In this document: positions 50,298-63,756 of the stretch, one piece after another
Layout: each line of letters begins with the position of its first letter
How positions within the stretch are numbered: the stretch's first letter is position 1
Source: Bugula neritina
Lineage: Eukaryota; Animalia; Bryozoa
Assembly: GCA_964035545.1 (NCBI GenBank)
Contig: OZ037765.1
Coordinates: 33,913,504-33,977,503, forward strand
Direction of reading: 5' to 3'
Length of the DNA stretch: 64,000 nucleotides
Translations under genes and position numbers: made by a program
The notes under the pieces: generated by a model
Told to the model about the DNA's origin: nothing
Databases searched by the model: none
The model's input: the letters and a program-made list of their open reading frames with translations, nothing else

Positions 50298-50444
50298 TTA
50301 GGAGTCGCCTTCTCTCCTGTAGCCATTAAACCCAGGAAACAGGTAAAGTTTTCTCATATGAGTGAGAGTATCCCAGACTACAACCAACTGTCCTCCACTT
50401 TCAAAATCCCGATCTACACACAGTTTTCTCACTTTAGTCTGCAC
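50298..50444 (-). CDS. Gene A terminal exon, caspase p10 C-terminus
   Basis: actcag|GTG; VQTKV...GQLVVVWDTLTHMRKLYLFPG...; stop TAA at 50300-50298. Confidence 0.88.
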   Translation of the reverse strand: MQTKVRKLCVDRDFESGGQLVVVWDTLTHMRKLYLFPGFNGYRREGDS

Positions 50445-62400: not shown

Positions 62401-63756
62401 TAGCTAGCAGTATGAATAGTCACTAAATACTAGCTAGCAGTATGAATAGTCACTAAATACTAGCTAGCAGTATGAATAGTCACTAAATACTAACTAACAG
62501 TATGAATAGTCACTAAATACTAGTTAGCAGTATGAATAGTCACTAAATATTAGCCAGCAGTATGAATAGTCACTAAATACTAGCTAGCAGTATGAATAGT
62601 CACTAAATACTAGCTGGTAGCATAAATAGGTGAGAGTACTCTGTGTAGTACATATTCCTCTCACTTGTTTATAACATTTTATTGGCAATATATTTACATG
62701 TTATATTTATTACAGTATCATTCTACACTACAATATAATACACACCTGTTTGGTAAAGTTGACAGTTTACAGTTCTCCATGCTCAACTCTCTCAATGATA
62801 GTAAGGATGTGAATATATTGTCAGGTAGACCTTCAGATAGGTTATTATCTGATATATTCAATACCTCAAGATTCTTCAGTGAAGATATGCTGTAACATAA
62901 CATACAGGTTATAATAAAAACAAAACAAAACAAAACATGAAAACTGCAATATGCATATACAGCCTGTGTTTCTTGAATGTTTCTATGAAGGTATTAGAAA
63001 CCACACCCTTATCTAGCCATGTTACAGAAAGAACTTTGACTAATATAAAACAAGTCACTCTGTCTACCAGAAGAAGAGATATATAATTCACAATGGTTTG
63101 TGAATATCATTATAAAAACTGAGTGCCCATATAGCAAATTATTTCACAATTTGTAGCCTCAGCATACAAAGCTGGAGTAGTGACTGAATTTTAGAAAGTT
63201 AACATGACTCTGTAATTCTGGCATCTAACCTTTAGACAACCTTGGGTATAACAGTAGTATAGGTAGTTGTGGTATGACAATGTGGGTTAGATTAGAGGGA
63301 AGATAACTCTAATATACAGAAGTAGTTTCTTATATAGTCTAAACACTAGCAAGTCATAGACTGAGAACTAAACAGACAGGAAGATCAGTCAGTAAGAACA
63401 ACTGAGTTACCAATAAGATAGTATATATATATACTACTACGGTAAATTGATTATGGGATATTATATATTTAGTTACCAATAAGATAGCATGTATGCTAAT
63501 ATGATAAAGTAATTATGCATAATTAATTTATCATAGTATAGCATATATATCATATGGGATATTATACATATATTTATCCTGGAAATATTCTACACTATAA
63601 TATAATACACACCTGTTTGGTAGAGTTGACAGTTTACAGTCCCTCATGTTCAACTTTCTCAATGATAGTAAGGATGTGAATATATTGTCAGGTAGATCTT
63701 CATATAGGTTATTCTCTAATATATTCAACACCTCAAGATTCTCCAGTGAAGATATG
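50298..63756 (-). CDS. Gene A: spliced LRR-Roc-COR-caspase (Roco-caspase fusion); 5' end outside window; one 4-bp frameshift, so possibly a null allele or recent pseudogene
   Basis: Thirteen GT-AG exons with compatible phases: 63756-63613, 62889-62746, 61321-61178, 60456-60313, 59241-59098, 55379-53373, 53204-53112, 52980-52790, 52503-52333, 52232-52010, 51286-51113, 51008-50899, 50444-50298. Motifs: LRRs, P-loop GNTMAGKTS, DMGGQ, THKD, caspase MTHG / ETCSG / KLYLFPG. Confidence 0.85.
50899..51008 (-). CDS. Gene A caspase p10 exon
   Basis: ttgtag|CA...CAG|gtaggt; SFISKRHPVYGSLMIRAL...DLYTIFKQ (equivalent to SWR..GSWFIQ). Confidence 0.88.
51113..51286 (-). CDS. Gene A caspase intersubunit linker / p10 start
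   Basis: tcacag|AG...GAGT|gtaagt, phase 1-1; ...RLNYDDLLVVKSSME resembles the D-F-L-x-x-x-S-T strand of p10. Confidence 0.8.
52010..52232 (-). CDS. Gene A caspase p20 exon 2 with catalytic His/Cys
   Basis: ttatag|GAA...GGAG|gtaaaa; VLVIMTHG (His) and MAGKPKVVILETCSG (Cys, equivalent to QACxG). Confidence 0.92.
52333..52503 (-). CDS. Gene A caspase p20 exon 1
   Basis: ttcag|GTG...GAG|gtaggt; VFTMTRKRGRALIINNMNF...RKGSDVDVENM...FHVVTHTDLKAE, the canonical start of a caspase large subunit. Confidence 0.9.
52790..52980 (-). CDS. Gene A linker exon 2 (191 nt, phase 1-0)
   Basis: ttgcag|TT...AAG|gtgatc; open acidic linker ...DLSDLSDEDENLLPDRKEVEKMKF...TDK. Confidence 0.75.
53112..53204 (-). CDS. 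Gene A linker exon 1 (93 nt, phase 1-1)
   Basis: gtatag|GT...CCTG|gtaact; open frame CQTLSDREIGMLTEFVKDLKVRRAQKISALP. Confidence 0.75.
53373..55379 (-). CDS. Gene A large exon: last LRRs + Roc GTPase + COR domain (4-bp insertion at 55306-55309)
   Basis: Acceptor ttaacag|C (phase 2), donor CCAT|gtaagt (phase 1). Roco-typical [23 protein letters not shown]-cap, G1 GNTMAGKTS, G2 ETT, G3 DMGGQEVY, G4 THKD, COR-like motifs (LPLVW, YMHDCGKVLWY, FIVP). Matches the 679-aa ORF 53266-55305. Confidence 0.92.
55890..56679. mobile_element. Non-autonomous DNA transposon, possibly Academ-like
   Basis: Imperfect TIRs TAGTCTGGCAGAA / TTCTGCCACACCA plus internal inverted GGATAAAGTTTTTT; GTA flanking duplication; absent from the paralogous gene B intron. 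Confidence 0.55.
57199..57451. mobile_element. MITE with the same GGGCCACAC termini
   Basis: TA|GGGCCACAC...GTGTGGCCC|TA; absent from the paralogous intron near 12050. Confidence 0.7.
57500..58997. repeat. Same 30-bp minisatellite, split by the hAT insertion
   Basis: Tandem units on both sides of 57633-58798. Confidence 0.93.
57633..58798. mobile_element. Non-autonomous hAT element inserted in the 30-bp satellite
   Basis: TIR CAGGGTTGGGG, perfect 8-bp TSD GTTAGCAG, subterminal TAATTG repeats. Confidence 0.9.
59098..59241 (-). CDS. Gene A LRR cassette exon (144 nt, phase 2-2)
   Basis: Same splice sites; [47 protein letters not shown]. Confidence 0.9.
60313..60456 (-). CDS. Gene A LRR cassette exon (144 nt, phase 2-2)
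   Basis: Same splice sites; [47 protein letters not shown]. Confidence 0.9.
61178..61321 (-). CDS. Gene A LRR cassette exon (144 nt, phase 2-2)
   Basis: Same splice sites; [47 protein letters not shown]. Confidence 0.9.
61649..61883. mobile_element. Old hAT-type MITE
   Basis: CAGAGGTGGGCAAC...GTTGCCCACTCTTG with a degenerate 8-bp TSD. Confidence 0.5.
62259..62628. repeat. Same 30-bp minisatellite, about 12 copies
   Basis: Tandem units. Confidence 0.93.
62746..62889 (-). CDS. Gene A LRR cassette exon (144 nt, phase 2-2)
   Basis: Same splice sites; [47 protein letters not shown]. Confidence 0.9.
63613..63756 (-). CDS. Gene A LRR cassette exon (144 nt, 2 LRRs, phase 2-2)
   Basis: ttacag|C...CAAACAG|gtgtgt; [47 protein letters not shown]. 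Confidence 0.9.

What the first reader, a model, noticed from the sequence alone, without database searches (positions are those of the whole stretch)
50298..63756. Roco-caspase fusion: LRR sensor + Roc-COR GTPase switch + caspase effector in one gene
Seen: the Roc-COR exon (53373-55379) joins a complete caspase p20/p10 through seven short-intron GT-AG exons, all phase-compatible and stop-free; there is no kinase. Known: Roco proteins (LRRK1/2, MFHAS1, DAPK1) dimerise through Roc-COR in a nucleotide-dependent way, and initiator caspases are activated by induced dimerisation. Inference: this is a single-chain intracellular receptor in which LRR ligand binding drives Roc-COR dimerisation and caspase activation. 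It would be functionally analogous to an NLR/apoptosome but built on a GTPase. I do not recall this architecture being characterised in animals, but I could not search for it.
Basis: partly seen in the sequence, partly recalled or inferred. Interest (0 to 1): 0.95.

Follow-up and report, generated by a model that had tools for sequence, protein, structure and literature searches.

The report
Frameshifted bryozoan LRR-Roco-caspase gene copy
This gene of a moss animal (bryozoan) joins a fast-changing recognition surface, a GTP switch and a cell-death protease in one design shared by at least 69 genes of the genome, which look like untested one-piece immune sensors, although this particular copy carries a 4-base insertion that cuts its protein short before the switch.

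Summary
Confirmed with one caveat. The minus-strand gene has LRR exons, a 2,007-nt Roc-COR exon and seven GT-AG exons that are in phase, stop-free and encode a full caspase (catalytic His and Cys present). All 69 Roc-COR exons found in this genome have a caspase catalytic exon downstream on the same strand. RNA contigs, mostly from paralogs, show six of the seven downstream junctions; 53112>52980 was not seen. Whole LRR-Roc-COR-caspase models exist in Watersipora and amphioxus. The caveat: this copy has a private 4-nt insertion near 55305 and stops at 55289, before the P-loop, so it is probably a recently broken copy. Family features: the exposed LRR face shows diversifying change (dN/dS about 3), two caspase types alternate behind near-identical Roc-COR exons, and an acidic [DE]xSDx[DE] linker motif is conserved. 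The design was predicted in bacteria (PMC8195603) and 'LRRs-caspase' proteins were noted in amphioxus (PMC2575513). I found no paper on the bryozoan family and no experiment on any member. The scan has reported this family before on other DNA of this genome. Activation by dimerisation is inference.

The parts
63613..63756 (-). LRR exon (144 nt, two repeats, phase 2-2)
62746..62889 (-). LRR exon (144 nt, phase 2-2)
61178..61321 (-). LRR exon (144 nt, phase 2-2)
60313..60456 (-). LRR exon (144 nt, phase 2-2)
59098..59241 (-). LRR exon (144 nt, phase 2-2); Pfam LRR_1/LRR_8/LRR_4
53373..55379 (-). Large exon: last LRRs, Roc GTPase (P-loop GNTMAGKT, G3 DMGG, G4 THKD) and COR, ending in a Cys-rich segment
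55305..55308 (-). 4-nt insertion private to this copy; frameshift
55289..55291 (-). Premature TAG in the frame entered from the LRR exons, before the P-loop
53112..53204 (-). Linker exon 1 (helical-looking, variable among paralogs)
52790..52980 (-). Linker exon 2 with the conserved acidic [DE]xSDx[DE] motif, leading into the caspase
52333..52503 (-). Caspase large subunit, first exon (RxGS arginine of the S1 pocket)
52010..52232 (-). Caspase catalytic exon: His in IMTHG, Cys in ETCSG
51113..51286 (-). Inter-subunit linker and start of the small subunit
50899..51008 (-). Caspase small subunit (SKRH, second S1 arginine)
50298..50444 (-). Last exon, KLYLFP strand and stop codon

Best explanation
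The locus is a recently broken copy of a large bryozoan family of single-chain LRR-Roc-COR-caspase genes. Shown: the exon structure, the family (at least 69 genes), spliced transcripts from the family, intact GTPase and protease motifs, rapid change on the LRR concave face. Inferred: intact members are cytosolic immune sensors. A variable LRR solenoid binds a foreign or damage ligand, this changes the nucleotide state and dimer arrangement of Roc-COR, and the tethered caspases are brought together or released, self-process and trigger cell death or another defence output with no CARD/DED adaptor. The conserved acidic linker motif may be the self-cleavage site that frees the caspase, or a phosphorylation site that guards it. 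This copy would give only a truncated LRR product, probably removed by nonsense-mediated decay: a loss in a birth-and-death gene cluster.
For: Phases and stop-free exons. 69/69 Roc-COR exons with a downstream caspase exon, 64 within 5 kb (paired by eye). Donor GT at the same codon in 29 paralogs while the sequence after it diverges. Spliced junctions in RNA contigs with zero intron depth. One-chain models in Watersipora (XP_067947674.1, XP_067948342.1 and others), Bugula neritina (KAF6024315.1, KAF6029336.1, named CASP8) and Branchiostoma (XP_002614028.1 and about 11 more). LRR face pN 0.32 against pS 0.13 and pN 0.08 elsewhere, 1 of 20,000 random codon sets as high. Two caspase types interleaved on the Roc-COR tree. 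Insertion absent from all 29 paralogs, with no excess of private changes in this copy. Bacterial LRR-GTPase-COR-effector systems predicted as counter-invader (PMC8195603).
Against: No ligand, GTPase, protease or cell-death data for any member. Junction 53112>52980 not seen and 53373>53204 rests on one low-depth contig; no contig spans COR to caspase; most RNA contigs are 90-99% alike and so come from paralogs or alleles. The insertion was not verified in raw reads. The active-site pentapeptide is atypical (E[TV]CSG, or HACSG in the second type, against QACxG). The direction of the Roco dimer switch is debated (PMC6337361).
Confidence: 0.66

Rival explanations
1. This copy is functional after all: the 4-nt insertion is an assembly error or one null allele, or splicing to the weak in-frame AG at 55290-55289 skips it and drops about one LRR.
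For: All downstream exons are intact with no excess private substitutions. An AG at 55290-55289 gives a phase-2 entry into the Roc-COR frame (sequence).
Against: The insertion is not a homopolymer slip. The AG has a poor pyrimidine tract, is ordinary coding sequence in paralogs, and no joint to it was listed. A second truncated copy lies in the same window, so broken copies are normal here.
Confidence: 0.15
2. The fusion is real but not an immune death receptor: it is a developmental or stress signalling protease, for example in polypide regression and regrowth, or a scaffold whose caspase is weak or inactive.
For: Atypical active-site pentapeptide. Bryozoan zooids regress and regenerate in cycles (own knowledge). 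No infection-response data were examined.
Against: At least 69 clustered copies, excess amino-acid change confined to the LRR face, module exchange and frequent loss are marks of host-parasite conflict, not housekeeping. His, Cys and both S1 arginines are kept across two genera.
Confidence: 0.14
3. Two adjacent genes: an LRR-Roc-COR gene ending at the stop at 53266 and a separate short caspase gene.
For: The Roc-COR ORF runs on to a stop at 53266. The middle junction was not seen in RNA. Some Watersipora models end without a caspase.
Against: Conserved donor at 53372 in 29 paralogs; an RNA joint from the COR exon to the next exon and joints from the linker exon into the caspase in three studies; linker homology to one-chain Watersipora models; only 168 nt between COR exon and next exon.
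Confidence: 0.05

Closest known systems
Bacterial LRR + AP-GTPase (Roc) + COR + variable effector counter-invader proteins (Kaur et al. 2021, PMC8195603)
   Same: Same domain order; rapidly evolving N-terminal LRRs; caspase is named among at least 24 C-terminal effectors; several paralogs per genome with different effectors.
   Different: Predicted only, in bacteria. Here a spliced animal gene with a true p20/p10 caspase closest to animal caspases, expanded to at least 69 copies.
Amphioxus 'LRRs-caspase' hybrids (Zhang et al. 2008, PMC2575513)
   Same: LRRs and an active-site-bearing caspase in one chain, proposed as a direct link from pathogen recognition to apoptosis. Branchiostoma models with LRR and caspase found here all have Roc-COR between them.
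   Different: The paper does not mention a GTPase; I could not confirm that its models are these proteins (figure not held). Amphioxus versions keep QACRG, lack the acidic linker, and alternate with GT4, death or OTU domains. One or two origins is unresolved (p-AU 0.42).
Brown algal LRR-ROCO candidate immune receptors (Teng et al. 2024, PMC11378527; Zambounis et al. 2012 as cited in PMC4104024)
   Same: Clustered expansion, LRRs on symmetric phase-2 exons, diversifying selection on LRRs.
   Different: 72-nt single-repeat exons there, 144-nt two-repeat exons here; no caspase (the word is absent from the paper; a few have a trypsin-like peptidase).
MFHAS1/MASL1, LRRK1/2, DAPK1 and C. tepidum Roco
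   Same: LRR-Roc-COR core; best profile and fold matches are 6HLU, 3DPU, LRRK1, LRRK2.
   Different: No kinase, WD40 or death domain; caspase in the effector slot; 11-16% identity in the structural alignments.
NLR inflammasome / Apaf-1 apoptosome with initiator caspases
   Same: Sensor, nucleotide switch and caspase logic (own knowledge).
   Different: GTPase rather than STAND ATPase; caspase is covalently attached; no CARD, DED or death domain detected.

Membership tests
Roco (Roc-COR) GTPases | Roc domain with P-loop, G3 and G4 motifs | tested here: met
   Pfam Roc 31.6 bits, cut-off 27; GNTMAGKT, DMGG, THKD here and near-invariant in 30 loci
Roco (Roc-COR) GTPases | COR domain in tandem after Roc | tested here: met
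   Pfam COR-A below cut-off, but profile hits the isolated COR structure 3DPT at E 2.5e-25 and the model (pLDDT 92.7) matches LRRK1, 6HLU, 3DPU, 3DPT by fold
Roco (Roc-COR) GTPases | GTP binding, hydrolysis and nucleotide-dependent dimer cycle | not testable with these tools
   Needs biochemistry; only monomers can be modelled here
LRRK / DAPK kinases | Protein kinase domain | tested here: not met
   No kinase hit in the exons scanned or in whole Watersipora and amphioxus models
Caspases (peptidase C14A) | p20/p10 caspase domain | tested here: met
   Peptidase_C14 on three exons; Watersipora homolog matches caspase-3, CED-3, caspase-9 and -8 structures at E 1e-18 to 1e-21
Caspases (peptidase C14A) | His-Cys catalytic dyad | tested here: met
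   IMTHG and ETCSG; kept in all paralogs read
Caspases (peptidase C14A) | QACxG pentapeptide and S1 pocket (two Arg plus Gln) | tested here: inconclusive
   Both arginines present; Gln replaced by Glu (type A) or His (type B); Watersipora keeps QACSG
Caspases (peptidase C14A) | Cleavage after aspartate | not testable with these tools
   Needs an assay
Classical initiator caspases (caspase-2/8/9/10) | CARD, DED or death prodomain | tested here: not met
   No Pfam hit on the two linker exons; none in Watersipora one-chain models. It may work like an initiator without being one of these.
NLR / STAND receptors | NACHT or NB-ARC ATPase | tested here: not met
   The NTPase is a Roc GTPase
Bryozoan LRR-Roc-COR-caspase family | Continuous reading frame from LRRs to caspase in this copy | tested here: not met
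   4-nt insertion and stop at 55289; 29 paralogs read through
Bryozoan LRR-Roc-COR-caspase family | One transcript from COR to caspase | tested here: inconclusive
   Six of seven downstream joints seen in RNA contigs of the family, none spanning the whole; 53112>52980 not listed

The most novel reading that the evidence does not exclude
Bryozoans use a GTPase-gated, adaptor-free caspase receptor as a main intracellular immune repertoire, parallel to NLRs, diversified by duplication of LRR exons and by exchange of caspase modules of different specificity between paralogs; activation follows the Roco nucleotide cycle and self-cleavage at the conserved acidic linker. That would give a direct enzymatic read-out of what ligand binding and GTP do to a Roc-COR switch.
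Probability: 0.35. Interest if true: 0.85.

Novelty: new variant of a known kind. Interest (0 to 1): 0.58.

Why it matters
If intact members work as inferred, animals have a class of intracellular receptor that couples recognition to a caspase through a Roco GTPase and not a STAND ATPase. It would be a simple system for the open question of how Roc-COR nucleotide state and dimerisation control an attached effector (relevant to LRRK2 and MFHAS1), because protease self-cleavage is easy to measure. It would also describe a major part of bryozoan immunity, now hidden under names such as 'CASP8', 'MFHAS1 homolog' and 'SHOC-2'. This copy itself matters mainly as evidence of turnover in the cluster; it is a poor choice for experiments.

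Tried and rejected
The spliced model was searched exon by exon, by reference; the joined protein was not built for any search or fold. A metagenome scan for another allele of this locus found nothing. The single read-laying run gave contigs, not raw reads, and could not settle whether the insertion is in the source colony. Paper searches for Roco+bryozoan, caspase+bryozoa+architecture and 'LRR-caspase' gave no hits; Huang et al. 2008 was not held; the library lacks most subscription papers. A single origin of bryozoan and amphioxus fusions could be neither shown nor rejected; some group labels in that tree (JGI/ENA rows) were assumed, not verified. Rejected: kinase-bearing LRRK/DAPK, NLR membership, chance adjacency, and a gene start at 63756.

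Full report
Observation. The minus strand carries five 144-nt LRR exons (63756-63613, 62889-62746, 61321-61178, 60456-60313, 59241-59098), each AG-GT bounded, phase 2-2 and coding two repeats. Four more such exons lie just beyond the window end, so the gene has at least nine and starts outside the window. A 2,007-nt exon (55379-53373) follows, then seven short exons down to the stop at 50298. From 55305 on, all eight exons are in phase, GT-AG bounded and stop-free, 1,013 codons in all. Pfam finds LRRs, Roc above cut-off, weak COR-A and Peptidase_C14 on three exons, and no kinase. The joined protein was not searched; every search was by exon reference or with database proteins.

The break. Entered in phase 2 from the LRR exons, the large exon reads 29 codons and stops at 55291-55289; the Roc-COR frame is a different one. 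All 29 paralogs examined read through this place. The difference is four extra bases near 55305-55308, and paralog contigs in one RNA run and one DNA run show them 'left out'. The copy has no excess of private substitutions (4 non-synonymous, 2 synonymous), so the lesion looks recent. I could not check it in raw reads. A weak in-frame AG at 55290-55289 could in principle bypass it; no joint uses it.

Identity of the parts. The P-loop, G3 and G4 motifs are intact and almost invariant in 30 loci. A profile of 76 homologs hits C. tepidum Roco (6HLU E 5e-62, isolated COR 3DPT E 2.5e-25), LRRK1 and LRRK2. The AlphaFold model of the exon product (pLDDT 92.7) matches the same structures by fold. The caspase has the catalytic His and Cys and both S1 arginines, but E[TV]CSG in place of QACxG; a Watersipora homolog with QACSG matches caspase-3, CED-3, caspase-9 and caspase-8 structures. 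No CARD, DED or death domain was found.

One gene or two. The genome (216 Mb, 321 contigs) has at least 69 related Roc-COR exons (61-84% identity), clustered on C1, C5 and C6. Pairing these by eye with the 135 hits of the catalytic exon, all 69 have one downstream on the same strand, 64 within 5 kb and the rest within 16 kb; about 0.2% would be expected within 5 kb by chance. The donor GT after the last COR codon is at the same place in 29 paralogs, while the intron sequence diverges. Three runs from three studies have zero depth in the longer introns and so are RNA; they show joints matching 52790>52503, 52333>52232, 51113>51008 (three runs each), 50899>50444 and 52010>51286, and one low-depth contig joins the COR exon to the next exon. 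The joint 53112>52980 is not listed (26 joints were not shown, and this linker is too divergent for most paralogs to be laid). No contig spans COR to caspase, and most are 90-99% alike, so this is family-level evidence.

Relatives. Watersipora subatra RefSeq models join LRR, Roc-COR and caspase in one chain (XP_067947674.1, XP_067948342.1 and at least five more). Bugula neritina GenBank models do too, under the name CASP8. About twelve Branchiostoma models have LRR-Roc-COR-caspase. On a Roc-COR tree the bryozoan sequences form one long-branched clade; amphioxus caspase fusions sit in an amphioxus clade mixed with GT4- and death-domain versions and are rejected as a clade of their own (p-AU 5e-5). 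A shared origin with bryozoans is not rejected (p-AU 0.42), so one or two origins is open. Unnamed ENA proteins also join Roc and caspase without LRRs.

Signs of conflict-driven evolution. In 28 LRR exons, ten concave-face positions chosen beforehand from the LRR motif have pN 0.32, against 0.08 elsewhere and pS 0.13 overall (dN/dS about 3 against 0.6; 1 of 20,000 random ten-codon sets as high). Within this gene's five exons the figures are 0.26, 0.04 and 0.04. These are pairwise counts that ignore phylogeny and recombination. Two caspase types, about 90% and about 40-45% identical to this one, sit behind Roc-COR exons that are equally close (81-84%), and they interleave on the tree (4 changes, at least 2 forced by strong branches). 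One type-A and one type-B gene are 90-98% identical through the Roc-COR exon and diverge only at its end, which points to exchange of 3' modules by recombination. A second, truncated copy lies at 22713-10274 in this window.

A conserved linker motif. Between COR and caspase, an acidic [DE]xSDx[DE] motif is present in 28 of 30 paralog loci (the other two loci end early) and in 11 of 13 bryozoan database models checked, within otherwise variable sequence. It resembles both a DxxD caspase site and a CK2 site (own knowledge). That it is the release cut, or a phospho-guard on it, is inference. Amphioxus versions lack it.

Mechanism. Most likely, intact members are one-piece cytosolic sensors: LRR binding alters the Roc nucleotide state and the COR-mediated dimer, which positions or frees the tethered caspases. 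Roc-COR does mediate dimerisation in studied Roco proteins, but in the current working model the GTP state is monomeric and the GDP state dimeric (PMC6337361). So activation may be GTP hydrolysis with dimerisation, or release of inhibition inside a resting dimer. None of this is shown for this family.

Prior knowledge. Kaur et al. 2021 describe bacterial LRR-AP-GTPase-COR proteins with a variable effector slot that includes caspase (PMC8195603). Zhang et al. 2008 report amphioxus 'LRRs-caspase' proteins as possible direct links from recognition to apoptosis, with no mention of a GTPase (PMC2575513). Brown algal ROCO genes show phase-2 LRR exon shuffling without caspases (PMC11378527). Trichoplax Roco proteins carry CARD and death domains (PMC4104024). 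I found no paper on the bryozoan family, within a library that lacks most subscription journals. The scan has noted this family at many other places in this genome; one note gave me the lead to the bacterial paper, which I then checked.

Verdict. A real and large fusion family, a new variant of a predicted kind, untested; the copy in this window is probably dead. Interest 0.58.

Noticed in passing
window 22713-10274, minus strand: Second, truncated family copy: LRR exons at 22713-22573, 14506-14384, 13511-13371, 12951-12811 and the first 270 nt of a Roc-COR exon (10543-10274), in frame, ending at a GT just before the P-loop. No Roc-COR or caspase exons found downstream in the window; may be a deletion remnant or an LRR-only form.
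   Followed up: partly
window 15199-21500, plus strand: Degenerate Ty3/gypsy-like retrotransposon (RT, RNase H, integrase zinc-finger pieces in several frames) lying between two LRR exons of the truncated copy. Observed only.
   Followed up: partly
window 33193-33918, minus strand: Split DDE_Tnp_4 (Harbinger-like) transposase remnant.
   Followed up: no
window 22867-24100, 57494-57632, 58801-58997, 62259-62629: The same 30-bp tandem repeat sits in LRR-region introns of both family copies; it could promote unequal crossing-over between LRR units. Not tested.
   Followed up: partly
Roc-COR exon, about nt 1200-1550 of the alignment of 30 paralogs (window about 54100-53750): Two divergent sequence types (about 70% against 94% identity) occur within COR among paralogs, independent of caspase type, suggesting mosaic exchange inside the exon.
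   Followed up: no
window about 53550-53400: Conserved Cys-rich end of COR (CxCxHC ... WC ... LC) in all paralogs; possible zinc site.
   Followed up: no
L044:3001-8043 (P0276; also P0279, P0291): Single-ORF proteins of 1,550-1,680 aa from ENA assemblies joining a Roc domain and a QACRG caspase with no LRR hit; organism not given.
   Followed up: partly
Branchiostoma proteins P0209-P0250: Closely related amphioxus LRR-Roc-COR proteins carry caspase, GT4 glycosyltransferase, OTU or death domains in the same C-terminal slot, as in the bacterial systems.
   Followed up: partly
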